A stretch of DNA of 64,000 nt, taken from NCBI GenBank assembly GCA_977020255.1, contig CDROCS010002105.1, positions 496,001-560,000 on the forward strand, given 5' to 3'. The DNA is from Obrimoposthia wandeli. Taxonomy: Eukaryota. This document shows, one piece after another, positions 19,663-46,577 of this stretch. How positions within the stretch are numbered: the first letter of the stretch is position 1; each line of letters begins with the position of its first letter. Both the position numbers and the translations under genes were made by a program. The notes under the pieces are model-generated. The model was not told the origin of the DNA. It worked only from the letters and a program-made list of their open reading frames with translations, and searched no databases.

Positions 19663-21510
19663 TTAGCGACCATACGTTGATACAATAAATTGCTCGAACT
19701 CATTGCACATGTCGTTATCAGAATGAGCATTGTTGGCGAGTTTGTTGGCACCATCAATGATATTAATGGTGGCATTTAAAGGCGCAATCTCAGCACGCGT
19801 TCTCGACTCAAGTGCTGATATTTTCTTCTGCTCGATTCCCCATGCTTGCTCAGACGATAAGTTACACTCATCGGCTAGATATTTTGCGTTAAAGCCTTCG
19901 CCAGTCAAGTTGACGATGGTGTCGTTATGATTAACGCTGTTGCCGCCATTCCAGTAATACTTCGCTAATAGCGGTCCAATTTCTGGATTATCCGTTAAGT
20001 AACCAAGCTTTTCTGTTAGGTAGGTTCTTGTTTGATAAACAGCCATATGAGCCAGTAAATAACCTTGGTAAGCACACGAGGCTTCGTCTGATAAAAGGTG
20101 CGGAATAGCCATTAACGGGCGTGGGCTTGCATCCAGACCTAGAATTTGCTTTTCCGTGTCTCTTGCTAGTTTTGTTACCGTTTCTGCATTCAGTTCTTCA
20201 TCACTGAGTTGGTATAATGCGCGCTCAAAATAGGGAACAACCAAGATACTTCTTTCGCCGTAAGCCATAAACGGCTGTTTGCTATCTATAATTGCTTTAA
20301 TTACCTTATCGGGTACGGCATTTCCTTCTGTGTCTAACGCATATTGCTTTAACCAATCAGCATCGCCTAACAAGCTGTCACAAAACATGGATTGTGTTTC
20401 AGCATAAGCCATAGACGTTGGTGCAAATTCTTGGGCAAAACACGGTGCATTCATTTTTACATTCGAGAAATGCGCAGCGTGTCCGCCTTCGTGGAACAAG
20501 GTATTGATACCGTCATAGCCACTGCCTACTTGGTCGGGCTTCGCGTTACTGGTGAAGTTCACTTTTGCCGATACCCAATTTTCTTGATCGTAGAACGAAG
20601 GTACAGGGCCATGGCAGAATCCGTTTTGATATTTACCTTTACGATCAAGAAGATCTAACGTTAATTCAGCACCAGAATAGTCAATATTTAAACGACCAAA
20701 CGATTCAACCCAACGACGTAACGACTGAGAAAACGGTACATATGGGTCTAAATCACGCATAGCATCGCCCGAAAACGAGTATACAAAGTTATGCCCTTGT
20801 ACCGATTGCGGACCAAGAGAATCGATTAAGTTGTTTACGCTATTTTGATGACTGTCTTTTGTTCTAGCTTCGAAATCATCAAGAATCGTAAATAATTCAG
20901 CGGTTGTCATCTGTTCTGTTTTAACAATGGAGTAATCAAAGAAGCTGTTATAGCCTAATGATTTGGCGAACTTGTTACGCAGTTTTACTAACGCTAAAAA
21001 TCCGTTCTGTAGTAACCATTGTTCTAAATCTAATAGCGCTTGATGCGATGATTGACGTACTTGTTCGTTGGCACTTGCACGAATATTCGATGACAATACA
21101 GGCAGCGATCCTTCTGCCTTCTTACCGTCTTCACCGATATACGTCATTACATACTGTTGTTTCTTTTCAAACAAAGTAGCTTCAAATTGAATGAGTTCAG
21201 CTTTAAGTTGCTGCGCTTCTTCAGATTCTAGAGCATGTACCTGAAAAGTCGCGAGCCATCCTTTCAGTCCAATTAGGGTTTGTGTTTTTTCATCTGACTC
21301 TTCAAGAGATTCCGCGACGTTGATCTGCGCTTGTACATCAGAAATTTGAGAAGAGGTGCTTAAAAAAGCATTCCATGCGGTTTCTGCTTTGGTCGAGCCA
21401 TCATGATCATCACTCATCCCCATGTAGGTATCCCAAAAGAAATCTTCTTTTGTTCGGTGAATAGACAAGTAACGTTCGTTTAGTGAGTTAAGGTAAGCAG
21501 TAGCTGTCAT
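19663..21510 (-). CDS. M3 family zinc metallopeptidase (oligopeptidase)
   Basis: RKGKYQNGFC, TLFHEGGHAAH (HEXXH), AETQSMF. Confidence 0.88.
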   Translation of the reverse strand: MTATAYLNSLNERYLSIHRTKEDFFWDTYMGMSDDHDGSTKAETAWNAFLSTSSQISDVQAQINVAESLEESDEKTQTLIGLKGWLATFQVHALESEEAQQLKAELIQFEATLFEKKQQYVMTYIGEDGKKAEGSLPVLSSNIRASANEQVRQSSHQALLDLEQWLLQNGFLALVKLRNKFAKSLGYNSFFDYSIVKTEQMTTAELFTILDDFEARTKDSHQNSVNNLIDSLGPQSVQGHNFVYSFSGDAMRDLDPYVPFSQSLRRWVESFGRLNIDYSGAELTLDLLDRKGKYQNGFCHGPVPSFYDQENWVSAKVNFTSNAKPDQVGSGYDGINTLFHEGGHAAHFSNVKMNAPCFAQEFAPTSMAYAETQSMFCDSLLGDADWLKQYALDTEGNAVPDKVIKAIIDSKQPFMAYGERSILVVPYFERALYQLSDEELNAETVTKLARDTEKQILGLDASPRPLMAIPHLLSDEASCAYQGYLLAHMAVYQTRTYLTEKLGYLTDNPEIGPLLAKYYWNGGNSVNHNDTIVNLTGEGFNAKYLADECNLSSEQAWGIEQKKISALESRTRAEIAPLNATINIIDGANKLANNAHSDNDMCNEFEQFIVSTYGR

Positions 21511-21733
21511 TATCGTCCCTATAAATGTAAGCACGTGATTAATTTGAAATATTATATGTCTATTTGATAATAATACATATGGTATTTTTTATGTGGTTCA
21601 CGTTTAAAAATAGTGAGTTATAGCATTCCTGCTGTAAACGATGATATACATATAAGAGTGAAAGAAAGGTGTTTGTTGCCTTTAATGGTATTGATTGTTT
21701 TACAGTCGCCAAAAAAATTTCAAGGAAGAGATC

Positions 21734-26235: not shown

Positions 26236-27713
26236 AATGGTAATTCCAAAATACAACGTGTTGGCTTACGTTGGCAGATAAGCTTGCCACCCATTTGCTT
26301 CATAAGGCGAGAGACGATAACTAGACCGATCCCCATATTGGTTTGACTCATTGAAGGACTAACAAGTGTTAACCAACGTTGAATGATACTCGGGAATTCA
26401 CCCTGATCAGACACTTGAATTCGCAGTACTTGATCAACATGAATATCGATAACGACGTTACCTTTACCATGTTGCTGAGCATTTTTTATCAGGTTCTCGA
26501 TACAGATCCCAAGCCAATAGTAGGGTAGGTTTAATTCTCGATCTTCGTTCAATGTGTAATCCAGTGAATACTTGTCTAAATAATGATCTAACCAGTCAGA
26601 GAGATAAGCACTTTGATGTTGAAATTGCTCTTCAGGTTGAGAACTCAAATAGCCCTTACTGGTTTCTGCTAATTGAGCCAGCCGTTGATGGTCTGCCATT
26701 AAGCGCCATACCGTTTGTTGTGTGTTGTCACTTAACTCATCAAATTGATCGCGAAACATCTCTACGGTAAAGCCCAAACTGGTGATGGGTGTTCTTAGCT
26801 CATGTGTTAGAAGCTGGAGGATAAATTGTCGTTCTTTTGCATTCTGCCGCCGTTGGTAAATGTTACGTGTTATCAAAAATGCAATAGCTAAAGCTAAAAA
26901 ACCCAAAATCCAACGAGTTAGTTGAGGCGCTGGTGTCGCGACATTTAAACAAATGTTGCTGTACCGAAATGAACAAATTGCGGCTGTGTTGTCTGCTATC
27001 ACTAATTTCATCGAATGTGCAAGAGGTTGCCATTGATTAACGTCGATGGCTTTCCAACCCGAGTCACTGTTTAACCACAGTGTGTTCTGTTTGGTTATGT
27101 AAGCTCGATAACCAGATAACAAGGCATCTACCCCTTGAGGGGAGAGCTCATAAAGTAGAGCGTTCAATGGATGCGCTTGGTTAGAGAGCGTTAATTGCCC
27201 CCGATGCTGAGCTAAAAAATGATCACGATGTGGTTTATCAAGTGAAGCAAGGTAGCGGTCGGCATAGCTGCCGCCAGCAGGGTGAAGTAAGGCTTTACTT
27301 TCAAACCAACTACTTGCTAATGGCTTTTTTTTGCACAGTGCCAGTTCAAACTCGATTGCATCTTGTAGTTTAGTCTCTTTGAATTTTATGTCTTGAAGAC
27401 CTGTGCCTTGTGGATTGATCTTGGTGAATAAAGAATGATCTTGTTGGCACTGTTCACCTATTTGCCACAGCTGCTGTATTTCCTGCCAGTGGAATTGGCT
27501 GAAAATAGGGTACTGACTGCTGCTGAGAAGTAGTGATTTAGGGTAGAGGTTAATGTCGGCTTGGCTAATATTTTTTTGTGGTGAGAGTAAGCCAGCTCGC
27601 TGATAAAACTGTTGCCATAATGTTTGAAGATTCATTGCACTATCTTGAGCAACTGCTGGTGAAGCGTTAACACAAAAGACAACAAGTAAGCCTATAAGTT
27701 GAAAGCGATTCAT
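26232..27713 (-). CDS. DUF3404-domain sensor histidine kinase (VxrA/VbrK-like)
   Basis: Signal peptide, IEFELALC...LLHPAGGSYADRY, single TM, LTHELRTPI, ENLIKNA, degenerate G1 DQGEF, GIGLVIV. Confidence 0.82.
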   Translation of the reverse strand: MNRFQLIGLLVVFCVNASPAVAQDSAMNLQTLWQQFYQRAGLLSPQKNISQADINLYPKSLLLSSSQYPIFSQFHWQEIQQLWQIGEQCQQDHSLFTKINPQGTGLQDIKFKETKLQDAIEFELALCKKKPLASSWFESKALLHPAGGSYADRYLASLDKPHRDHFLAQHRGQLTLSNQAHPLNALLYELSPQGVDALLSGYRAYITKQNTLWLNSDSGWKAIDVNQWQPLAHSMKLVIADNTAAICSFRYSNICLNVATPAPQLTRWILGFLALAIAFLITRNIYQRRQNAKERQFILQLLTHELRTPITSLGFTVEMFRDQFDELSDNTQQTVWRLMADHQRLAQLAETSKGYLSSQPEEQFQHQSAYLSDWLDHYLDKYSLDYTLNEDRELNLPYYWLGICIENLIKNAQQHGKGNVVIDIHVDQVLRIQVSDQGEFPSIIQRWLTLVSPSMSQTNMGIGLVIVSRLMKQMGGKLICQRKPTRCILELPL

Positions 27714-28040
27714 AGTGTGAATTGTGCTATCCTTGTTTAATCTATTGATTTTTAGATGATATTATCTAATTGAAGTTGTGTTTTTTATATATTACACACA
27801 TATATACACACATTAAAAATACTGTATTTTACAATTATGATTGTTAATTAATTTTAAAGATACAAAAAAGATCCAAGAAAATGACGTTCAATGTCGATTG
27901 AAATAAGATAAATCACAGATCATAAACGAGTAGTTGGGGCTCAATTATTTGTGTCTTAGCGTTAATTTCAGAGCGCATTTTCACCAGAGCATTAACTGTG
28001 TAATTTTAGGTTGGGTGGTGTGATCCGCAGTAAGCGATAA

Positions 28041-28262
28041 TTTATCTATCGAGAAATTAACAACGTTGCCCAAAGCGGCTCTCGCATCGACTTGATCACC
28101 GTTGAAGCGAGGTTTAACGGAGAGGCGCCACTCGGGTTAAAAACAGGGTTGGTTAACCTAGATAAAATCCTAGCACCTAAAAACATCTTACCAGGTACAT
28201 TTGTGGCCATAGGAGCTCGGCCTAAGATGGGTAAAACTGCATTCACTCTAAAGATTGCCGAG
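28041..28262 (+). pseudogene. Phage-type DnaB helicase remnant with internal deletion
   Basis: In one frame after an upstream TAA: FIYREINNVAQSGSRIDLITV (DnaB N-domain-like) joined to GLKTGLVNLDKIL...GARPKMGKTAF (Walker A); cut off at 28262. Confidence 0.8.
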
Positions 28263-28317
28263 TCCCGCATGCAGGGTGTTGTGGGGGCTGAGGGTTAAAG
28301 ACCCTCGGCTACCCGAT
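28263..28317 (+). mobile_element. 3' end of a group II intron (class C type): 3' half of domain V plus domain VI
   Basis: CCCGCATGCAGGGTGTTGT then GGGGGCTGAGGG-TTAAAGA-CCCTCGGCT-A-CCCGAT; bulged A at -7 (28311); terminal AT. Confidence 0.75.
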
Positions 28318-28340
28318 GAATAAGTTTAAAACTAAGTGCA

Positions 28341-28724
28341 CTACAAAAACTGGGCTGGTCCATCTAAAAATAAAATACCAAATGGAGCTTGGATATAAGT
28401 GATGTATAAAAACTCAAAAAATCCTTGTGATGGAAAATCTACGTCAGAATTAGGATTAGCCATCTCATGAACCTCATAAACATCCATACCATCAACCATT
28501 CTTCCTAATTCCCCTACACCAATTTTTTGAAGGTTTGTAATGTGAGATTGATACTGTTCAATATTCAAAAATGAGATTTGGCTTACTAAGGAAGATTTAA
28601 CTGTATACCGGTCCTCAGCATCCCAATTAGTGTCCCAACAACTTATAAATGGCATTAAAAATAGATAAAAAACAATAATATATTGCATAAAACCCCATGT
28701 ATTGATAGTTAATAAAATGTGCAA
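28341..28724 (-). CDS. AT-rich orphan hypothetical protein
   Basis: 127-aa ORF, probable start MQYII (28688) with a hydrophobic N-terminus; no motif recognised. Confidence 0.45.
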   Translation of the reverse strand: MHILLTINTWGFMQYIIVFYLFLMPFISCWDTNWDAEDRYTVKSSLVSQISFLNIEQYQSHITNLQKIGVGELGRMVDGMDVYEVHEMANPNSDVDFPSQGFFEFLYITYIQAPFGILFLDGPAQFL

Positions 28725-29404
28725 TATGCAATATGCACTTATAATATTGTATTAAACGATCTAAGATCGTAGATATCAAAAATCTGTATCGCAAAATACT
28801 TATTACGTTAAATTGTCGGCTTAGTAGGGTAAAACACCACACTAAGCACTTTAACGCTTACTGACTGCCATTTTATCTCGTTATTTATGGTAAATAATAC
28901 AAAATGTGTCTGAAAAATTATCACTAATATCAGTTCAGATGATATTGATCATGCTTTCAATTCAGGTTCGGCATGATTTGATGGTTAACAACTTAAAATC
29001 ATAGCTTTAGTCATCTAGTTAAAAGCAAAAACAGCTTGGCTGTGTGAAGGCGATTAATGCGGGTTTTTGAGTCAGTCGCGGTTCCGACTCGCGATCTATA
29101 CCGAAAAGTTGGACGGTAGGGAGAGTGCGCTTCTATTGTTACGTTCCTGAAAAACATTTGGTGTCTATTTTTAGCCGCCAATTCAGTCGACCTCTTTCAT
29201 CGGCTGCGCGACACTTAATCCTTATTTGTTATACCTTTTTCAATGAAGCAATAGCCAAACTAATGTGTTTATTTTTTGCTAGGCCTGAGCGTTTAACTAA
29301 ACCAACTAAATTAGTTGAAATACTATTACTCGGTAACCCCGTTGCTAGATCCTTAAATTGTTTCTTGCTGGTAACTTGAAAGTCATACCCATTCTCATTT
29401 AAAA

Positions 29405-29974
29405 ATGCCATTCATTTCCGAACGCATGACAAGGCTCACTCGTATCGATAACGAATTAACCCACGAGATAAAAAAATGGCGATACTATCCCGTAGTGAAA
29501 GCAATTCAAGCTATGCGCGGCATCCGATTACTGGTTGCCGCGGGAGTCATTGCTGAACTCGGGGATCTCAATCGATTCGACCATCCAAGTAAGCTTATGA
29601 GCTATTTGGGACTAGTACCCAGAGAACACTCCAGTGGTAACTCTCGGCGGCTAGGCGCTATCACTAGGTGTGGTAACCACCGAGCACGACGTTTATTAGT
29701 TGAAGGGGCACACAGTTACCGGCATCCCGCTAAGATTTCCGCTGAAATGCAGCAAAGACAAGAAGGTCTGAGTAAAGACATCATAGAAATTGCTTGGAAA
29801 GCACAATTAAGATTGTGCCGACGATACCAACGATTACTTCAACGAGGGAAACATCGTAACTTGATAGTCACGGCCATTGCCCGAGAAATGATTGCATTCA
29901 TTTGGTCGATTACACATGAAGTTGTCTTATCCCCCGTCGATCTTAAACAACGATTAGTGAGAATACCGAAATGA
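29405..29974 (+). pseudogene. IS110-family recombinase, C-terminal half only
   Basis: AMRGI...VIAELGDLNRF..PSKLMSYLGLVPREHSSG (catalytic Ser)...ITRCGN..ARRLLVEGA..AIAREM; N-terminal DEDD RuvC domain absent. Confidence 0.9.
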
Positions 29975-30275
29975 CAAAATTTGAGTTGGCGTATCAGGTC
30001 AAGCCACGATTAGTGGTGCAAACTCCGATAGACGTTGGCTGGCTGTTACGATAAGTAATAGATCCACGAGCATAGACTGAAGACCGGCACCACGACGTAA
30101 TAAGTAAGGTAGGCAAGGCTGATTAAACCAATCAGTAACCCTCGAATACCTGCATGTTAATCGTCGAAAGTTACAGGCTTCATCTAATGCGTCAGCTCAT
30201 CTCTCACAGATATCATGGCTCTGGCTTTGCTTGAGTTAGATTTTCTACACGCTGCTTGACATGGGGAGTCATACC
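29413..30275 (+). mobile_element. 5'-truncated IS110 element with intact right end abutting an attC site
   Basis: Recombinase fragment, ~300-nt 3' non-coding region, then right end CTTGACATGGGGAGTCATACC (TTGACA at 30256-61) directly followed by AAC of attC. Confidence 0.75.
29975..30275 (+). ncRNA. Candidate IS110 bridge/seek RNA
   Basis: Non-coding and stem-rich (GTGGTGC 30013-19 pairs with GCACCAC 30087-93); TAGACGTTGG (30029-38) is the exact reverse complement of the insertion junction 30274-83. Confidence 0.55.
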
Positions 30276-30375
30276 AACGTCTAACATAAGTTGCACCACG
30301 GCTAACTCACCAAGTACACCGAACTCCACACCAACACTGCGGAGTAAAGCGTGTCAACTTGATGTTTTTATAAGT
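30272..30375 (-). other. attC-like integron recombination site of the GNAT cassette (R'' lacks AAC)
   Basis: Top (minus) strand CTTAT^AAAAAC-ATCAAGTTG...CAACTTAT-GTTAGAC-GTT; extra C in L''; 7-nt L'-R' spacer. Confidence 0.75.
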
Positions 30376-30394
30376 ACATTAACCTGCTGAATTA

Positions 30395-30811
30395 TTAGCC
30401 TTTTAATTGTTCGATCTTCGGTAAAACCCATGCACTATTATGAGCTTCAAATCCAATTTTTGGATAATAATCTACTGCTTGAGGCGCTGCCAATAAAATC
30501 AACTTACAGTTAGTATGTAGCTGTTCTTTCGATACTTTGATTAACTGCTTGCCGATACCTGAAGCTTGAATACTTTCATCAACCGCAAGGTCTGATAAAT
30601 AACAGCAAAAATGAAAATCAGTAACTGATCGAGCAATTCCAACCAATTGCTTGTTAAGCCATGCAGTTACAATCAAATTAGAGTTATCCAACATTCCTTT
30701 AATCATTGATTCATCTTCAATTGGTCTACGAATACCAAGAGACGTTTTCTTAAGTAATTCGATAAACTGCTCAGACGTAACTGATTGATTCACTTTGTAT
30801 TCAATTTCCAT
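30395..30811 (-). CDS. GNAT acetyltransferase, integron cassette type
   Basis: LVGIARSVTDF..CYLSDLAVD...GIGKQL...YYPKIGF; bounded by GTTATAA upstream and attC downstream. Confidence 0.9.
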   Translation of the reverse strand: MEIEYKVNQSVTSEQFIELLKKTSLGIRRPIEDESMIKGMLDNSNLIVTAWLNKQLVGIARSVTDFHFCCYLSDLAVDESIQASGIGKQLIKVSKEQLHTNCKLILLAAPQAVDYYPKIGFEAHNSAWVLPKIEQLKG

Positions 30812-30840
30812 TTAAAGATACCTACTTACTTATTTTTTGT

Positions 30841-30964
30841 TTATAACGCCAGCCATAATACACCACAACGTATTACTATAATGTTGATATAACCACCAAA
30901 AACACCAATGCTAATTTATACCTAGAATGCCGAGCGTTGATGGTCGTTTGATGGCCTTATAGTG
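30841..30964 (-). other. attC-like site, 124 bp (R'' lacks AAC)
   Basis: Top (minus) strand CACTAT^AAGGCC-ATCAAACGACCA...TGGTGTATTAT-GGCTGGC-GTTATAA; length typical of Vibrionaceae cassette repeats. Confidence 0.72.
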
Positions 30965-30969
30965 ATATT

Positions 30970-31236
30970 TTAACCAAGAATATCAGCCTGTTTTTGGAAC
31001 AATTTTAAGTCCTCAATTTTTCTACTTTTTGCTGCTGTAAACCATTGAACTCCAGTGTCATCTGCATGATCAAACTCTATGCGAAACTCATATTTACTAC
31101 TTACTAAAAAGGCCAAAACCATCCCTATTAAAGAACCGACAACAGGAAGACATGTAGAAAAAGCCAACCCATATTCTTGATTCTCAGAAGGTAAAAATAT
31201 GAACAGCAAACTTGAACTCACAACCCCCAGTATCAC
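30970..31236 (-). CDS. Small membrane hypothetical protein (cassette-like, possibly 5'-truncated)
   Basis: 88 aa, two hydrophobic segments, AAGGAG before GTG; stop 6 nt from attC. Confidence 0.55.
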   Translation of the reverse strand: MILGVVSSSLLFIFLPSENQEYGLAFSTCLPVVGSLIGMVLAFLVSSKYEFRIEFDHADDTGVQWFTAAKSRKIEDLKLFQKQADILG

Positions 31237-31260
31237 CGCGATCTCCTTTTTATTATCGAC

Positions 31261-32199
31261 TTAATCTATGTTGCCATTGATATGCGGATTATTTTTAATG
31301 AGGTTTTTGAATTGCTCTAACAGTGCAATGCTTTGTTTGTTTTGTAATCTATCTTTATGTAGGTATGCTCCAATAGTCGCCTTACTAAAACATTCTTGCA
31401 TTTGAAGCGGCACAATATCAAAGGTACTAAAGTAAGATCTCATTCCTATCGGGTAAGGTAAAATTGCGTCGCTGTTTTGTAACAAATCAATTGCTGTTAA
31501 TAGTGAATTGGTATTATAGATAACCTTTTCTTGCAAATAGTGACGTTTTTGAAAAGACGTTAATTTTTCGTTTTGTTGTTGAACTAAATGTGAAAAACGT
31601 TTTTTTGACGCGCCTAAATCGACAGAAGGAAAGCGTGCGATATCTTCATTACTGCAAGTGATCTCAAGTAGAGGATGCCCTTTTCTGACATAGACTTCTT
31701 CGCAACTGCTAAATAGGGGATGGAACAGTATGCCTTCGTATTGCGCTAGGCCGAGTATCTCATGCCCAACAAAGATGCTAATTTCATCACTTAATAATAA
31801 ATTCATCAGCTGTAAGTGATTGCCAACATCGATAGATATATTGCTGTGAGGGTAAGTATCACGAAAGTCTTGAACGCTGTCTCGAATAAAAAGATGCCAC
31901 CAAGCATCACCACAACCAATCTTAAGTTCAGTTTGATGCCTCAGTTTATTCTTCTCTAATTTATTGAGGGTATTCTCGTACAGGTTTTGCATCATTTTCG
32001 CTTGTTCATAAAGAAGCTCTCCGCTAGAAGTAAGCGTGATTCCTTTTGAGTTACGATTAAACAATTTACTGCCAAGCTTTTCTTCTAACTTCTGCATGTT
32101 ATGGCTTAACGTCGGTTGACTTAAGCTGAGGTTGTTAGCAGCTTGGGTGACGTTCTGAGTCTTAGCTACTTGAATGAATTGGATCATTAACTTAAACAT
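31261..32199 (-). CDS. LysR-family transcriptional regulator
   Basis: NVTQAANNLSLSQPTLSHNMQKLEEKLGSKLFNRNSKGITLTSSG. Confidence 0.93.
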   Translation of the reverse strand: MFKLMIQFIQVAKTQNVTQAANNLSLSQPTLSHNMQKLEEKLGSKLFNRNSKGITLTSSGELLYEQAKMMQNLYENTLNKLEKNKLRHQTELKIGCGDAWWHLFIRDSVQDFRDTYPHSNISIDVGNHLQLMNLLLSDEISIFVGHEILGLAQYEGILFHPLFSSCEEVYVRKGHPLLEITCSNEDIARFPSVDLGASKKRFSHLVQQQNEKLTSFQKRHYLQEKVIYNTNSLLTAIDLLQNSDAILPYPIGMRSYFSTFDIVPLQMQECFSKATIGAYLHKDRLQNKQSIALLEQFKNLIKNNPHINGNID

Positions 32200-32231
32200 A
32201 ATAGCTCTTTGCTTCGACAGAAAGAGCTATT
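32200..32231. other. Hairpin abutting the LysR start codon
   Basis: AATAGCTCTTT-10 nt-AAAGAGCTATT, 11-bp stem ending at the ATG (32199). Confidence 0.6.
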
Positions 32232-32262
32232 TTATGATGCTTATTTGTATATATCTATCTAT

Positions 32263-34110
32263 CTATCGATTTTGATACATAGCGAAGCCAAATGGTGCCA
32301 ATGTTAGTGTTTTTGTTAATTGGCAAGGCGTTTCGTGATAAATATCAATGACATTATGGTCAGAAAGTGAACTAGGAAGCTTCACTTCAGCGGTTTTATC
32401 GCTGTTATTAATAAAGACAGTAATGCATTCTTCATGATTCTCTTTTTGATAGATTAAGCATTGTTGCTCATCGTCTGTCATTAGCCACTTCATCTTATGA
32501 GCTCGAAGTGCTGGATGATGCTTTCGTAATTTAATGATCTGCATAATATGTTGTTTCATATTGAGATCATGTTTACTTTCATCCCAAACCATACATTTAC
32601 GGTTTAGTGGGTCTGTACCACCATCTAATCCAATCTCGCCACCATAGTAAATACACGGGGTTCCGCTGTGAGTAAATTGGAATAAATAAGCCAATTTTGC
32701 TTTTTCTTTGTTTCCTGAACATTGATGAATAATACGAGCGGTATCATGGCTATCTAACAGTGAAAACGCCACTTCATTTACTGTAATTGGGTAGCTTACA
32801 TTGACATCATTCACCGCGTATTTAAATTGCTTTGCGCTAAGTGTATCGTTAGCGAAAAACCCGAGAATAGCATCTGTAAGTGGGTAGTTCATTACCGCAT
32901 CAAATTGATCGCCACCTAGCCAGTTCATGGAGTCGTGCCATACTTCACCTAAAATATAGATTTCAGGTTTAATGGCTTTTAACTCATCACGGAAGCGTCG
33001 CCAGAAGCGTTGGTCGACTTCGTTAGCGACATCTAAACGCCACGCATCGATATCAAAATTACGCACCCAGTAACGGCCAACTTCAATCAGGAATTCCATC
33101 ACTTCTGGATTTTCAGTGTTGAGTTTTGGCATGTTTTGCGCAAAAGCAAAAGCACGGTAATTGAGTTTTTCTTTGCTGTGACGATCTTTTTTAGATTCAT
33201 CAATCAAAGGGAACTGCTCAACATAAAACCAATCAATGTATTTTGAATCTTTGCCATGCTTAATGACGTCTTGCCACTGTACCGAGTTAGCGCCGATGTG
33301 ATTAAACACCGCGTCTAACATGATTTTCATGCCGCGTTTATGCGCTTCGTGAATCAATGTTTTTACTGTTTCGTCATCACCAAAAGCAGGGTCTACTTTT
33401 AAATAATTTGTGGTGTCGTATTTGTGGTTGGTTTCACCTTGGCTAATTGGGGTGAAATACAGACCTGTAATACCGAGATCTTGTAGGTAATCAAGATGGT
33501 CAATAACCCCTTGTAAGTCTCCACCAAAGAAACTGTTGCTTTTAGGGTCTTCTGAGCCCCAAGGGAGTGCATTTTTAGGTGAGATTGACGGGTCACCATT
33601 GGCAAAACGTTCAGGGAATATTTGATACCAAATGGTTTCTTTAACCCAACTAGGAGCATTAAATACATCCGTTGGGTTCATATAAGGGAAGCAATAAAAG
33701 TTCAGTAATTGACTGAGTGCAGGATCCGCATCATCTGTTATTGTTGTGATTTGTTTTTCGCCTGCCAGTAAACGTTCGTTATCTTTACCTTCAAGAATAA
33801 ACGCGTAACGTGCGCGATAAAATTGCGGCTGTGCCTCACAGAACCAGTAATCAAACAGTTCAGTTTCACACTCTTTTTCCATAGAAATATTGGTGCCACC
33901 AGTCCAACCGCTAGCATCTTCTGCATTTAAGTTACCGCCACCACCGCCAACCGACCAATCGTAAGGGTCACCAATTCTTAGCGTCGCGTTATTGACTTCT
34001 CCTTTTGCGGTACGAATTCGCAGATGAAGGGTGTTCTTGTCGTATGCATAAGAATAGCTAGAGTGAGAGCGATGATAAATCGCAGCTTTTGTAATCATGT
34101 TAGATACCAT
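32263..34110 (-). CDS. Cyclomaltodextrinase/neopullulanase (GH13_20)
   Basis: N-domain AIYHR..LHLRIRTAK, WYQIFPERFANGD, DAVFNH, AWRLDVANE, ILGEVW, LDSHD; likely start 34098. Confidence 0.93.
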   Translation of the reverse strand: MVSNMITKAAIYHRSHSSYSYAYDKNTLHLRIRTAKGEVNNATLRIGDPYDWSVGGGGGNLNAEDASGWTGGTNISMEKECETELFDYWFCEAQPQFYRARYAFILEGKDNERLLAGEKQITTITDDADPALSQLLNFYCFPYMNPTDVFNAPSWVKETIWYQIFPERFANGDPSISPKNALPWGSEDPKSNSFFGGDLQGVIDHLDYLQDLGITGLYFTPISQGETNHKYDTTNYLKVDPAFGDDETVKTLIHEAHKRGMKIMLDAVFNHIGANSVQWQDVIKHGKDSKYIDWFYVEQFPLIDESKKDRHSKEKLNYRAFAFAQNMPKLNTENPEVMEFLIEVGRYWVRNFDIDAWRLDVANEVDQRFWRRFRDELKAIKPEIYILGEVWHDSMNWLGGDQFDAVMNYPLTDAILGFFANDTLSAKQFKYAVNDVNVSYPITVNEVAFSLLDSHDTARIIHQCSGNKEKAKLAYLFQFTHSGTPCIYYGGEIGLDGGTDPLNRKCMVWDESKHDLNMKQHIMQIIKLRKHHPALRAHKMKWLMTDDEQQCLIYQKENHEECITVFINNSDKTAEVKLPSSLSDHNVIDIYHETPCQLTKTLTLAPFGFAMYQNR

Positions 34111-44942: not shown

Positions 44943-46577
44943 ATGAGTATTTATTTTATTGGCGTTGATGTTGGTAGTGGCAGCGCAAGAGCGGGTGTTT
45001 TCGATGCCTCTGGTCGAAAAGTCGGTGAAGCAAAACGCGACACACAAATGTTCAAACCTCGTGCCGATTTTGTTGAGCAATCATCTGAAGATATTTGGCA
45101 AAGTGTGTGTATGGCGGTAAGAGATGCTGTTTCACAAGCGAGTATTGATCCGATTCAAGTAAAAGGCATTGGCTTTGATGCAACGTGTTCATTAGTTGTT
45201 TTGGATAAGAAAGGCCAACCTTTAACGGTAAGCCCAACGGGTCGTAGTGAACAAAATGTCATTATGTGGATGGATCACCGCGCCATTGCACAAGCAGAGC
45301 GTATTAATGCGACAGAACATCCGGTATTAGCGTATGTGGGAAATCGTATCTCTCCTGAAATGCAAACACCGAAGTTGCTTTGGCTAAAGCAAAATATGCC
45401 AAATACTTGGTCACAAGCTAAATATTTTTTTGATTTACCCGATTTTTTAACGTGGAAAGCAACGTTTGATGATAGCCGCTCTCTTTGTTCGACCGTGTGT
45501 AAATGGACATACCTTGGTCATGAAGATAAGTGGGACACACACTTTTTCGAACGTATTGGATTAGATGATTTGCTTGCTGATGGAGCAAAGTCTATTGGCA
45601 ATGTTATTAAGCCAATGGGAGAGCCTGTAGGGCAAGGTTTAACTGCACATGCCGCCGATGATTTAGGTTTAATACGCGGTACGCCTGTTGGTACGTCGAT
45701 TATCGATGCTCATGCTGGTGGTATTGGTGTTCTGGGGGCTGCCGGTATGACTGGTGAAACTGCAGATTTTAATAAGCGCTTGGCATTAATCGGCGGAACG
45801 TCATCTTGCCATATGGCGGCATCAAAGACAGCACGCTTTATCGATGGTGTATGGGGAGCCTATTATGGCGCAATGATACCAAATCATTGGCTTAATGAAG
45901 GTGGTCAATCTGCTACAGGGGCGTTAATTGACCATATAATCACGTCGAATCCGTTATATGATCAACTAAAAGCACAAGCAAAGAAAGATGAGACAACGGT
46001 TTATCAATTACTGAATGATCATTTGTTGAAACTCGCTGGTTCTAAAGAAGATATTGCGTTTCTAACGAAAGATATTCATGTCTTGCCCTATTTTCACGGT
46101 AACCGCTCTCCACGAGCCAACCCAAATCTTACTGGTACAATTACCGGGCTAAAAATGTCGAAGACAATCGATGATATTGCATTGGCGTATCTAGCGACAA
46201 TTCAAGCCATTGCGTTAGGAACAAGACATATTATTGAAGTAATGAATCAGTCGGGATATGAGATTGATACCATTATGGGCTGTGGCGGTGGAACAAAAAA
46301 TGCGATTTTTGTTCAAGAGCATGCGAATGCAACTGGTTGTCTAATGTTACTACCAGAAGAAAGTGAAGCCGTATTATTGGGCTCTGCAATGCTAGGTTCA
46401 GTAGCGGCAGGTTTTTATTCCGATATTCCAGATGCGATGAATGCAATGAGCCGTATTGGAAAAGCAGTGACACCACAAACGGACAAAATTAAGCGTTTTT
46501 ATGATATGAAATATCAAATTTTCCATCAGATGTATGAAGACGATATAAAGTACAAACAGCTGATGTCTGAATTCTAA
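44943..46577 (+). CDS. FGGY-family pentulose kinase (D-ribulokinase-like)
   Basis: IGVDVGSGSARA, GIGFDATCSL, WMDHRA, SPEMQTPK, IIDAHAG, GGTSSCHM, FHGNRSP. Confidence 0.9.
   Translation: MSIYFIGVDVGSGSARAGVFDASGRKVGEAKRDTQMFKPRADFVEQSSEDIWQSVCMAVRDAVSQASIDPIQVKGIGFDATCSLVVLDKKGQPLTVSPTGRSEQNVIMWMDHRAIAQAERINATEHPVLAYVGNRISPEMQTPKLLWLKQNMPNTWSQAKYFFDLPDFLTWKATFDDSRSLCSTVCKWTYLGHEDKWDTHFFERIGLDDLLADGAKSIGNVIKPMGEPVGQGLTAHAADDLGLIRGTPVGTSIIDAHAGGIGVLGAAGMTGETADFNKRLALIGGTSSCHMAASKTARFIDGVWGAYYGAMIPNHWLNEGGQSATGALIDHIITSNPLYDQLKAQAKKDETTVYQLLNDHLLKLAGSKEDIAFLTKDIHVLPYFHGNRSPRANPNLTGTITGLKMSKTIDDIALAYLATIQAIALGTRHIIEVMNQSGYEIDTIMGCGGGTKNAIFVQEHANATGCLMLLPEESEAVLLGSAMLGSVAAGFYSDIPDAMNAMSRIGKAVTPQTDKIKRFYDMKYQIFHQMYEDDIKYKQLMSEF

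What the first reader, a model, noticed from the sequence alone, without database searches (positions are those of the whole stretch)
29975..30300. IS110 3' non-coding end encodes a guide complementary to the attC site it is inserted in (candidate attC-targeting bridge RNA)
Seen: the IS right end (…TTGACATGGGGAGTCATACC) joins directly to the AAC/GTT crossover triplet of an attC. Inside the 300-nt non-coding end, TAGACGTTGG (30029-38) is the exact reverse complement of the junction CCAACGTCTA (30274-83). In the same register 7 nt upstream, GTGGTGCAA (30013-21) is the exact reverse complement of attC arm TTGCACCAC (30291-99), giving 21/26 identity overall. The 9-mer can alternatively pair within the RNA with GCACCAC (30087-93). 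A weaker ATACC (30145-49) echoes the donor end (30271-75). Known: IS110/IS1111 recombinases use a bridge/seek RNA whose right target guide is antisense to the target, the -35 box at the right end forms a junction promoter on circularisation, and attC targeting is described for the IS1111-attC group. Inference: this recombinase looks like IS110-group (LGLVPREHSSG…ITRCGN; no subterminal inverted repeats noticed) yet carries a downstream guide RNA programmed for the integron R' crossover, possibly with extended pairing into the L' arm. That would be an RNA-guided element parasitising or reshuffling cassette arrays. This copy lacks the DEDD domain, so it could act only as an RNA in trans.
Basis: partly seen in the sequence, partly recalled or inferred. 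Interest (0 to 1): 0.8.

Follow-up and report, generated by a model that had tools for sequence, protein, structure and literature searches.

The report
attC-seeking guide RNA in IS relic
The stretch is the intact guide-RNA end of a dead, half-deleted insertion sequence (ISVisp2-like, IS1111 group). Its RNA is written to recognise the integron cassette recombination site (attC) it sits in, which is a known mechanism seen here in a lineage and at an attC position not reported in the papers I could search.

Summary
TAGACGTTGG (30029-38) is the exact reverse complement of the junction CCAACGTCTA (30274-83).

It lies in the 5' strand of an internal loop of a conserved structured RNA in the 301-nt 3' end of a 5'-truncated IS. 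About 70 relatives from marine Gammaproteobacteria show a 1.55-1.6 kb IS. It has a 384-aa DEDD transposase, 12-bp subterminal inverted repeats and a TTGACA-N17-CATAAT circle-junction promoter. Its 3' RNA has two stem/loop/hairpin modules.

Helices covary strongly. Both guide arms covary with their own flanks. Nearly all copies abut AACGCC plus an attC-like hairpin. One intact copy in a Klebsiella class 1 integron places the insertion at the R' core (GT|TAGAT), antisense to the cassettes.

The family is ISfinder's ISVisp2. It is already classed in the IS1111 group with a right-end bridge RNA predicted. attC-targeting seekRNAs are experimentally known for ISKpn4 and ISPst6.

The 9-mer is the RNA's own P1 stem.

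What may be new is the lineage, only 22-23% identical to ISPst6/ISKpn4, and the target position: the R' crossover rather than the 5' end of attC. This copy is an immobile relic.

The parts
29413..29974 (+). Relic of the transposase gene: C-terminal half only (about residues 199-384 of 384). The mechanical ORF starts at ATG 29405. The DEDD/RuvC domain and the IS left end are missing.
   Evidence: Pfam PF02371 only. tblastn with a full-length relative matches 29414-29968 to residues 199-383 and finds no N-terminal piece elsewhere in the window. Full-length relatives carry PF01548 plus PF02371.
29975..30275 (+). 3' non-coding right end of the IS (301 nt), which encodes the seek/bridge RNA.
   Evidence: It aligns end to end with the right ends of 70 relatives. 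Folded alone it gives two modules, z = -3.0.
30013..30019 (+). P1 helix, 5' strand (GTGGTGC), pairing with 30087-30093.
   Evidence: Seven pairs, 97.9% paired over 41 sequences, five of them with compensatory double changes.
30025..30038 (+). Guide A (CCGATAGACGTTGG) in the 5' strand of the target loop. It is complementary to the IS-sense top strand of the right flank AACGTCTA plus CC of the IS end (right target guide plus handshake bases).
   Evidence: Exact 10-nt complement of 30274-83. The family consensus GGCGTTAGG is the complement of CCTAACGCC. It covaries with its own flank, p = 0.00015-0.004.
30041..30065 (+). P2 inner hairpin of the target loop (GG CTGTTAC gataa GTAATAG at CC).
   Evidence: The sequence varies but pairing is kept, with up to 23 of 41 sequences showing double changes at one pair.
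30068..30077 (+). Guide B (GAGCATA+GAC) in the 3' strand of the target loop. It has the same sense as the left target flank (..RYHTA) followed by the first three bases of the IS left end, so it pairs with the bottom strand (left target guide plus handshake).
   Evidence: In 43 relatives with a left flank, positions -5 to -3 match their own flank more than shuffled pairs do (2.05 against 1.61, none of 20000 shuffles as high). Examples are L019 ACCTA, L082 ACTTA and L098 ATCTA.
30087..30093 (+). P1 helix, 3' strand (GCACCAC).
30094..30165 (+). Second module, a candidate donor-binding loop. It has stem GACG/CGTC (30094-97 / 30162-65), a covarying hairpin CTGATT/AATCAG (30119-24 / 30130-35), and a 3' loop strand GAATACCTGCATG (30144-56) that echoes the IS right end CATACC+AG.
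   Evidence: One search shows hairpin covariation and the conserved GAATAYCAGCATG. One search gives the fold. The two relatives whose right end reads CATATC both have ATATC in the loop.
30256..30261 (+). TTGACA, the -35 box of the junction promoter formed on circularisation with CATAAT of the left end (17-nt spacer).
   Evidence: TTGAC is invariant in the family. The left end reads GACATAATGACTCC. The spacing is an inference.
30261..30275 (+). Right subterminal inverted repeat ATGGGGAGTCAT (30261-72) plus the 3-nt terminal extension ACC. The IS ends at 30275, or 30276 because one A is ambiguous.
30276..30372 (-). attC of the GNAT cassette, read on the minus strand (cassette sense). Its 3' R' GTT (complement of 30276-78) abuts the IS right end.
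   Evidence: DNA fold -16 kcal/mol as a long bulged hairpin. It is homologous to the attC beside relatives L099-L101. More than 50 contigs of the same attC type occur in run X1.
30395..30811 (-). GNAT acetyltransferase cassette gene whose attC carries the IS relic.
   Evidence: Pfam PF13673, PF13508 and PF00583. The upstream attC-like site at about 30845-30895 ends in GGCGTTATAA 30 nt before the ATG.

Best explanation
Positions 29413-30275 are the 3' 863 bp (tnp C-terminal half plus the whole 301-nt right end) of an ISVisp2-like insertion sequence of the IS1111 group of the IS110 family.

Its right end encodes a seekRNA/bridge RNA.
- Module 1 (30013-30093) is the target-binding loop. It consists of a covarying stem P1, an internal loop and an inner hairpin P2.
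- The 5' loop strand (30025-38) base-pairs with the IS-sense top strand of the target to the right of the crossover (A)ACGYC..
- The 3' loop strand (30068-77) pairs with the bottom strand of the left target ..RYHTA.
- Each guide runs on into 2-3 bases of the IS end.
- Module 2 (30094-30165) probably reads the donor ends.

The target is the R' core of attC sites, GGCGT|TAR.. in cassette sense, 1-2 nt from the integrase crossover. The IS lies antisense to the cassettes.

In a live copy the 384-aa DEDD recombinase, expressed from the TTGACA-17-CATAAT promoter of the excised circle, would use this RNA to recombine the circle junction with an attC. This follows what was shown for ISEc11, ISKpn4 and IS621.

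Shown here:
- sequence anatomy;
- RNA covariation;
- guide-flank covariation;
- site and orientation specificity.

Inferred from published work on relatives:
- RNA-protein complex formation;
- strand-exchange chemistry;
- the role of module 2.

This particular copy has lost its left end and catalytic domain and is immobile.
For: - Exact complementarity; 3 occurrences against 0.05 expected.
- Family: 80 loci with 70-93% identical Tnp C-termini. Their right ends align and stop at GGGAGTCATACC, followed by AACGCC in about 50 of 55 distinct flanks.
- Subterminal repeats and left end.
- RNA helices: 96.6% of cells paired against 86.1% in shuffles, 66 double-change cells against 15.8, 0 of 500 shuffles as high. 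Second-module hairpin covariation. Fold of this copy: z = -3.0.
- Guide-target covariation: right arm p = 0.00015-0.004; left arm 0 of 20000 shuffles. Compensatory cases are the window (guide GAC, flank GTC) against L016 (GGC, GCC), and L078 (guide AAGTT, flank AACTT).
- Position in attC: an intact copy in K. pneumoniae pKP5362-1 lies between arr-3 and qacEdelta1. Its flanks rejoin to ...GGCGGCGTTAGATGCACTAAGC.
- Context: 36 of 44 adjacent ORFs are on the opposite strand. 39 of 51 right flanks fold as AAC..GTT hairpins with z < -2.
- Literature: seekRNAs of the attC-targeting ISKpn4 and ISPst6 co-purify with the transposase, and in IS1111-type RNAs the top-strand match is 5' of the bottom-strand match (PMC11187229). 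ISVisp2 is listed as IS1111 with the bridge RNA in the right end (PMC11208160 supplement). ISVisp2 was matched to this family by motif search in the PMC11187229 supplement.
Against: - There is no direct RNA evidence for this copy. No sigma-70-like promoter is found in 29000-30450. The only RNA-library signal is a 161-nt contig of an L016-like variant in a metatranscriptome, which could be DNA carry-over.
- Rfam has no matching family.
- Pairing beyond AACGCC(N) is at chance level in most relatives, so the right guide is short, about 6-8 nt.
- Some copies (L075, L092, L098) have guides that mismatch their flank by 1-3 bases.
- The shuffle tests do not correct for shared ancestry.
- The donor-binding role of module 2 rests on an invariant motif and two weak concordant cases.
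Confidence: 0.87

Rival explanations
1. The complementarity is a chance match or a local inverted duplication peculiar to this copy, with no guide function.
For: Only 10 nt are exact. A third copy of the 10-mer occurs by chance at 20412.
Against: The same loop segment is complementary to the flank in about 50 independent relatives. It changes with the flank, as in the window against L016 and in L078. It also sits in a covarying RNA structure.
Confidence: 0.02
2. The guide extends over 26 nt. GTGGTGCAA (30013-21) also pairs with the attC arm TTGCACCAC (30291-99), for example by opening P1 on a folded single-stranded attC.
For: The match is 9/9 and exactly in register. I estimate about 3.5e-4 expected for an in-register 9-mer (inference). 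The closest relative, L016, keeps 7/9.
Against: - The 9-mer is the 5' strand of P1, which covaries with 30087-93 across the family.
- The family-wide best match to the own flank is no better than to foreign flanks, 5.26 against 5.16 of 9.
- L100, a near-identical IS in another attC of the same genome as L016, has 4/9. L101 has 6/9 and L102 has none.
- P1 does not change where the attC arm changes.
Confidence: 0.05
3. The conserved 3' end acts at the DNA level. It would be a recombinase binding site, or a captured attC half-site mimicking the target, rather than working through an RNA.
For: Guide A has the same sequence as the cassette-sense top strand of an attC 3' end (GGCGTTAGG). No RNA data exist for this family.
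Against: Compensatory changes keep four helices, which selection on double-stranded DNA would not do. The two guides match opposite strands of the target, as in the published seekRNAs and bridge RNAs. The RNA was shown to be essential for relatives in the same ISfinder group.
Confidence: 0.04
4. The relic's RNA is still made and works in trans with a transposase from another copy, or acts as a decoy.
For: All helices and both guides of this copy are intact. The published work says seekRNA use is not confined to very close transposases. Related ISs exist in the same assembly on contig C253.
Against: No promoter-like site lies upstream. No full-length copy of this lineage was found in the assembly; the best other copies are 67-68% identical and on another contig, possibly another organism. 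Published data indicate that the donor must be flanked by the matching target.
Confidence: 0.1

Closest known systems
ISVisp2 (ISfinder; IS110 family, IS1111 group) and its cluster ISCps8 / ISSpi3 / ISSso6 / ISMtsp6
   Same: Same transposase family. Relative L095 resembles ISVisp2 closely by eye, and the window fragment is 71% identical to L095. Both have a 384-aa Tnp and a long right end. Durrant et al. 2024 list a predicted bridge RNA in the right end.
   Different: The window copy belongs to a distinct Photobacterium sub-lineage whose guide reads GTTGG instead of GTTAGG. It is a truncated relic. I found no statement in the searchable papers that ISVisp2-type elements target attC.
IS1111-attC group: ISPst6, ISPa21, ISKpn4 (and ISPa25), with their seekRNAs (Tetu & Holmes 2008; Post & Hall 2009; Siddiquee et al. 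2024)
   Same: [quoted passage not shown] They insert in one orientation, antisense to the cassettes.
   Different: The transposase is only 22-23% identical to ISVisp2 in the published identity matrix, and is about 340 aa against 384 aa. The published group is described as inserting near the 5' end of attC (PMC3001079). This family inserts at the 3' R' core next to the integrase crossover. I could not check the insertion point of the published group directly.
IS621 bridge RNA (IS110 group; Durrant et al. and Hiraizumi et al. 2024)
   Same: The RNA has two loops, each with two guides that read opposite strands on either side of a short core. The guides run on into the partner's sequence. A DEDD recombinase and a circular intermediate with a junction promoter are involved.
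   Different: In IS621 the RNA is encoded in the left end, 5' of the gene, and the order of the guides is reversed. IS621 has only 2-3-bp subterminal repeats.
Group IIC-attC introns
   Same: These are RNA-guided mobile elements that specialise on attC sites and insert antisense to the cassettes.
   Different: They are retro-elements (ribozyme plus reverse transcriptase) that insert near the 5' end of attC. They have no DEDD recombinase.

Membership tests
IS110 family, IS1111 group | DEDD (RuvC-like) transposase with PF01548 plus PF02371 and the GLxPxxxxSG motif | tested here: met
   Full-length relatives have PF01548 and PF02371. The window keeps only PF02371, with YLGLVPREHSSG. The motif is described in PMC11187229.
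IS110 family, IS1111 group | Subterminal inverted repeats of 7-17 bp with short terminal extensions | tested here: met
   The left repeat is ATGACTCCCCAC after about 8 nt, and the right is GTGGGGAGTCAT followed by ACC, in full-length relatives. The window keeps the right repeat at 30261-72.
IS110 family, IS1111 group | Long non-coding right end (3' of tnp) that encodes the guide RNA, and a short left end | tested here: met
   The right end is 296-330 nt and the left end about 100 nt. The structured RNA lies in the right end.
IS110 family, IS1111 group | In the seekRNA, the top-strand match lies 5' of the bottom-strand match | tested here: met
   Guide A (5') is complementary to the top strand. 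Guide B (3') is identical to the top strand, so it pairs with the bottom strand. The criterion comes from PMC11187229.
IS110 family, IS1111 group | Site- and orientation-specific insertion without target duplication | tested here: met
   The L098 flanks rejoin to the uninterrupted arr-3 attC / 3'-CS junction with one ambiguous A. The right-flank consensus is AACGCC and the left is ..YTA. The 3'-CS sequence is recalled from memory.
IS110 family, IS1111 group | RNA co-purifies with the transposase and is required for movement | not testable with these tools
   This needs pull-down or transposition assays. It has been shown only for ISEc11, ISKpn4, ISPst6 and ISPa11.
IS1111-attC group sensu Tetu & Holmes (ISPst6 / ISPa21 / ISKpn4) | Transposase within the monophyletic ISPst6-related clade (members at least about 74% identical to each other) | tested here: not met
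   ISVisp2 is 22.8-23.5% identical to ISPst6, ISKpn4 and ISPa21 in the published matrix. The N-termini are visibly unrelated in sequence.
IS1111-attC group sensu Tetu & Holmes (ISPst6 / ISPa21 / ISKpn4) | Insertion near the 5' end of attC, antisense to the cassettes | tested here: not met
   The orientation is antisense, which is met. The position is the 3' R' core, which is not met. The 5'-end statement for the published group comes from PMC3001079 and was not re-examined on sequence here.
attC site (integron cassette recombination site) as the target | Imperfect palindrome with R''..L''/L'..R', ending in GTTRRRY directly after a cassette ORF | tested here: met
   The window site folds at -16 kcal/mol and follows the GNAT ORF. 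39 of 51 family flanks have hairpin z < -2. The arr-3 attC in a class 1 integron is an annotated example. No IntegronFinder model was available.

The most novel reading that the evidence does not exclude
The ISVisp2-like clade would be a second, independently evolved lineage of RNA-guided insertion sequences specialised on integrons.
- It is deeply diverged from the ISPst6/ISKpn4 group.
- Its seekRNA reads both sides of the integrase crossover in the R' core (GT|TAR), rather than the 5' end of attC.
- It is widespread in cassette arrays of marine Gammaproteobacteria, sometimes with several copies per array.
- It has already reached a clinical class 1 integron on an NDM-1 plasmid.

Insertion leaves the attC with its GTT. 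The IS plus the downstream cassette could therefore be excised and moved by the integron integrase as one unit.
Probability: 0.4. Interest if true: 0.5.

Novelty: new member of a known kind. Interest (0 to 1): 0.3.

Why it matters
The mechanism is established: RNA-guided DEDD recombinases, including ones that hunt attC sites. The finding therefore mainly confirms that such a guide can be read straight from sequence.

Its added value is modest but real.
- It documents a large, natural set of guide-target pairs (about 70 copies) for a deep-branching IS1111-group recombinase of 384 aa with a compact RNA of about 150 nt.
- This lineage aims at the integron crossover site itself, in marine bacteria.
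- One copy sits in a clinical resistance integron.

That bears on how cassette arrays are frozen or reshuffled. It also adds an orthologue to the pool of candidate programmable recombinases.

The window's own copy is a fossil and does nothing by itself.

Tried and rejected
1. Rfam scan of 27000-33000 at E <= 1 gave no family.
2. Extended 26-nt pairing is rejected.
3. AGTCATACC at 29381-89, 24 nt left of the truncation point, was tested as a possible second IS right end. No other right-end homology lies upstream, and the 9-mer also occurs in reverse complement at 45744. I treat it as chance.
4. My first ungapped inverted-repeat test for attC-likeness found nothing, because attC stems are bulged. 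A first fold-based scan was too strict. Both were replaced by fold z-scores.
5. I looked for ISKpn4/ISPa21 copies in the plasmid collection to compare insertion points directly. Hits H5, H6, H21 and H25 were unrelated IS110-family elements outside integrons, so the comparison rests on the literature.
6. Tetu & Holmes 2008 (PMC2447020) is not held.
7. Read laying used only assembled contigs. It cannot show a transcript's ends or level.
8. The window is not a large cassette array. It is ordinary chromosome with a two-cassette cluster.

Full report
**1. Observation**

The sequence is as described.
- TAGACGTTGG at 30029-38 is the exact reverse complement of CCAACGTCTA at 30274-83. That 10-mer spans the last two bases of the IS (CC) and the first eight of the flank.
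- GTGGTGCAA (30013-21) is the reverse complement of TTGCACCAC (30291-99). In register the identity is 21/26.
- GCACCAC is at 30087-93.
- ATACC is at 30146-50, one base off the stated position.
- The 10-mer occurs three times in the window on both strands, against 0.05 expected.
- The ORF 29405-29974 carries only the C-terminal PF02371 domain.

**2. What the element is**

A scan of one genome per species returned 80 loci that encode 70-93% identical C-terminal halves. Nearly all are from marine Gammaproteobacteria: Photobacterium, Pseudoalteromonas, Alteromonas, Shewanella, Colwellia, Vibrio and Rheinheimera.

Full-length copies have these features.
- They encode a 384-aa protein with PF01548 (DEDD) plus PF02371.
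- They are about 1.55-1.6 kb long, with a left end of about 100 nt and a right end of 296-330 nt.
- Homology on the left starts at (A)GACATAATGACTCCCCAC. On the right it stops at GTGGGGAGTCATACC.
- This gives perfect 12-bp subterminal inverted repeats with short terminal extensions.
- Joining the ends gives TTGACA-N17-CATAAT, a consensus junction promoter (inference from those alignments).

In the window, homology begins at 29413, about residue 199. No left end or N-terminal fragment is present. The copy is therefore an immobile relic. Its closest relative, in Photobacterium sagamiensis (L016, 93% aa), is also 5'-truncated, at another point.

A motif search in the supplement of Siddiquee et al. 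2024 identified the family's ISfinder representative as ISVisp2. Durrant et al. 2024, Supplementary Table 5, lists ISVisp2 as IS1111 group with the predicted bridge RNA in the right end.

**3. The RNA**

Alignment of 41 diverse right ends gives this arrangement.
- A 7-bp helix P1 (window 30013-19 with 30087-93) encloses an internal loop.
- The 5' loop strand holds CCGAnnGCGTTAGG.
- The 3' loop strand holds CCACGArCATAGACTGAAG.
- The two strands are separated by a variable hairpin, P2.

On the named structure 96.6% of cells pair, against 86.1% in shuffles. Ten of 13 pairs show compensatory double changes, in 66 cells against 15.8. No shuffle of 500 and no slid register comes near.

A second module follows (30094-30165). 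It has a short stem GACG/CGTC and a covarying hairpin. Its conserved 3' strand, GAATAYCAGCATG, echoes the right-end tip CATACC+AG. The two relatives whose tip reads CATATC both have ATATC there. This is weak but concordant evidence.

The window's own sequence folds into exactly these two modules, z = -3.0. The architecture is that of a bridge/seek RNA with a target-binding loop and a donor-binding loop.

**4. Guide and target**

*Right flank.*
- The right flank starts AACGCC in nearly all of 55 distinct guide/flank pairs.
- Identity to the reverse complement of guide A is 84-100% over positions 1-6, 40% at position 7, and at chance beyond.
- Anchored on GTT, each copy's guide fits its own flank better than other copies' flanks. 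For positions 4-7, p = 0.00015; for 4-6, p = 0.004.
- Informative cases: the window has guide ..TAGACGTT and flank AACGTCTA. L016 has ..CAGGCGTT and AACGCCT. L078 has GGAAGTT and AACTTCC. L100 has the same guide as L016 and flank AACGTCTGTC, matching 9 of 10.

*Left flank.*
- Flanks end ..RYHTA, followed by GAC of the IS.
- Guide B repeats that string in the same sense.
- Positions -5 to -3 match the own flank at 2.05 against 1.61 for shuffled pairs, with none of 20000 shuffles as high. Examples are L019 ACCTA, L082 ACTTA, L098 ATCTA and L024 GCATA.
- These tests ignore shared ancestry, so the p-values are optimistic.

Guide A (5') therefore pairs with the top strand right of the crossover, and guide B (3') with the bottom strand left of it. 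This is the order Siddiquee et al. describe for IS1111-type seekRNAs.

**5. The target is attC, at R'**

- 39 of 51 right flanks fold as AAC...GTT hairpins of 55-150 nt with z < -2.
- In 36 of 44 loci the next ORF lies on the opposite strand, so the order is cassette ORF, then attC, then IS right end.
- An intact copy in K. pneumoniae plasmid pKP5362-1 (NZ_CP095763.1; 80% aa to a Pseudoalteromonas copy) lies between arr-3 and qacEdelta1.
- Its flanks rejoin to ...GTTTATGGCGGCGTTAGATGCACTAAGC. That is the end of the arr-3 attC joined to the start of the 3'-conserved segment. The insertion is at GT|TAGAT or GTT|AGAT, since one A is ambiguous. The identification of the 3'-conserved segment sequence rests on my memory.
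- The insertion is thus 1-2 nt from the integrase crossover G|TT and antisense to the cassettes.
- In the window the same arrangement holds. The GNAT gene (30811 to 30395, minus strand) is followed by its attC (30372 to 30276), whose terminal GTT abuts the IS right end.
- A second attC-like site at about 30845-30895 ends in GGCGTTATAA, 30 nt before the GNAT start. In IS sense this reads TATA|ACGCC, an unoccupied copy of the family's target.

**6. The second match**

- Across 57 relatives, the best match of this segment to the own flank (5.26 of 9) equals that to foreign flanks (5.16).
- Within the Photobacterium lineage the attC arm varies without any change in P1: 9/9 in the window, 7/9 in L016, 6/9 in L101, 4/9 in L100 and none in L102.
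- An in-register 9-mer is improbable a priori, about 3.5e-4 by my estimate. It is, however, a single event on one attC type. I treat it as coincidence and give 5% to a real extended contact.

**7. Comparison with what is known**

RNA-guided targeting by IS110/IS1111 elements is established (PMC11187229, PMC11208160). attC-targeting IS1111 members have been known since 2008-2009. The seekRNAs of ISKpn4 and ISPst6 were purified with their transposases, and that of ISPa25 was predicted.

The family here meets every sequence-level criterion of the IS1111 group. It is not a member of the ISPst6-related 'IS1111-attC group', for two reasons.
- ISVisp2 is only 22-23% identical to those transposases.
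- That group is described as inserting near the 5' end of attC (PMC3001079), whereas this family sits at the 3' R' core.

I could not verify the published group's insertion point on sequence. I found no paper linking ISVisp2-type elements to attC; ISVisp2 is named in a single unrelated paper. A Shewanella integron survey reported no IS interrupting an attC.

**8. State of this copy**

All helices and both guides are intact. However, there is no left end, no catalytic domain and no promoter-like site in 29000-30450.

The assembly is 1.35 Gb in 6912 contigs, evidently a host plus bacteria. It holds no full-length copy of this lineage. The nearest are three copies at 67-68% identity on contig C253.

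Laid contigs show two things.
- The attC type is highly repeated in the likely source run, with more than 50 contigs. A large array therefore exists elsewhere in that sample.
- A marine-sediment metatranscriptome holds a 161-nt contig covering the target loop of an L016-like variant. This is compatible with transcription in the family, but DNA carry-over cannot be excluded.

Action in trans is possible but unsupported.

**9. Verdict**

- The core interpretation, an attC-programmed guide RNA at the R' crossover, is supported.
- The IS110-group assignment and the extended pairing are not supported.
- This is a fossil member of a known kind of system. The lineage and the target position appear undescribed in the literature I could search.

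Noticed in passing
G000 contig C253:3666278-3673585 (loci L015, L129): Three ISVisp2-like copies of about 1.56 kb lie within 7.3 kb, all in the same orientation. Each has GACAyAATGACTCC on the left and is followed by (A)ACGCC plus an attC-like repeat (the third copy's right end has decayed to GGGGAGTCATATA). This is a cassette array invaded several times, on another (bacterial) contig of the same 1.35-Gb assembly.
   Followed up: partly
L098 = NZ_CP095763.1:28578-30131 (K. pneumoniae IncC plasmid pKP5362-1): An intact 1554-bp family member is inserted in the R' core of the arr-3 attC of a class 1 integron, next to blaNDM-1, catB3, qacEdelta1 and sul1. It is the only such record among 72,556 plasmids by megablast. 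Its RNA resembles Rheinheimera/Alkalimonas copies most closely.
   Followed up: partly
window 30845-30895: A second short attC-like site lies upstream of the GNAT cassette (minus strand ...GGCTGGCGTTATAA). In IS sense it reads TTTATA|ACGCC, an unoccupied match to the family's target consensus. Together with the 88-aa ORF at 30970-31236, this makes a two-cassette cluster without an integrase, inside ordinary chromosome.
   Followed up: partly
window 29381-29389: AGTCATACC, preceded by CTTGAA, resembles the IS right-end tip and lies 24 nt left of the truncation point. No other right-end homology lies upstream, so it is probably chance.
   Followed up: yes
window 20412-20421 (minus strand): A third exact copy of CCAACGTCTA lies inside the ORF 19663-21534. 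It has no obvious link to the IS.
   Followed up: no
L039, L051, L055, L075, L088 (right ends): These copies carry short insertions (such as CGGTGACCGCC) in or just after the 3' strand of P1. L075 also has a scrambled guide A (GAAAAAGTT) that no longer fits its flank. These look like decaying RNAs in otherwise full-length elements.
   Followed up: no
run X1 laid on window 30276-30370: The attC beside the IS belongs to a repeat family with summed contig depth up to about 1266 against 12.6 for the surrounding DNA. This implies a large chromosomal cassette array elsewhere in the source sample.
   Followed up: no
L016 2000-2545 (Photobacterium sagamiensis): The closest relative of the window's relic is also 5'-truncated, directly after a GNAT-type gene whose product ends ...ITIADVRASIGDY. 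The preceding ORF may be its partner, which would make a possible toxin-antitoxin cassette.
   Followed up: no
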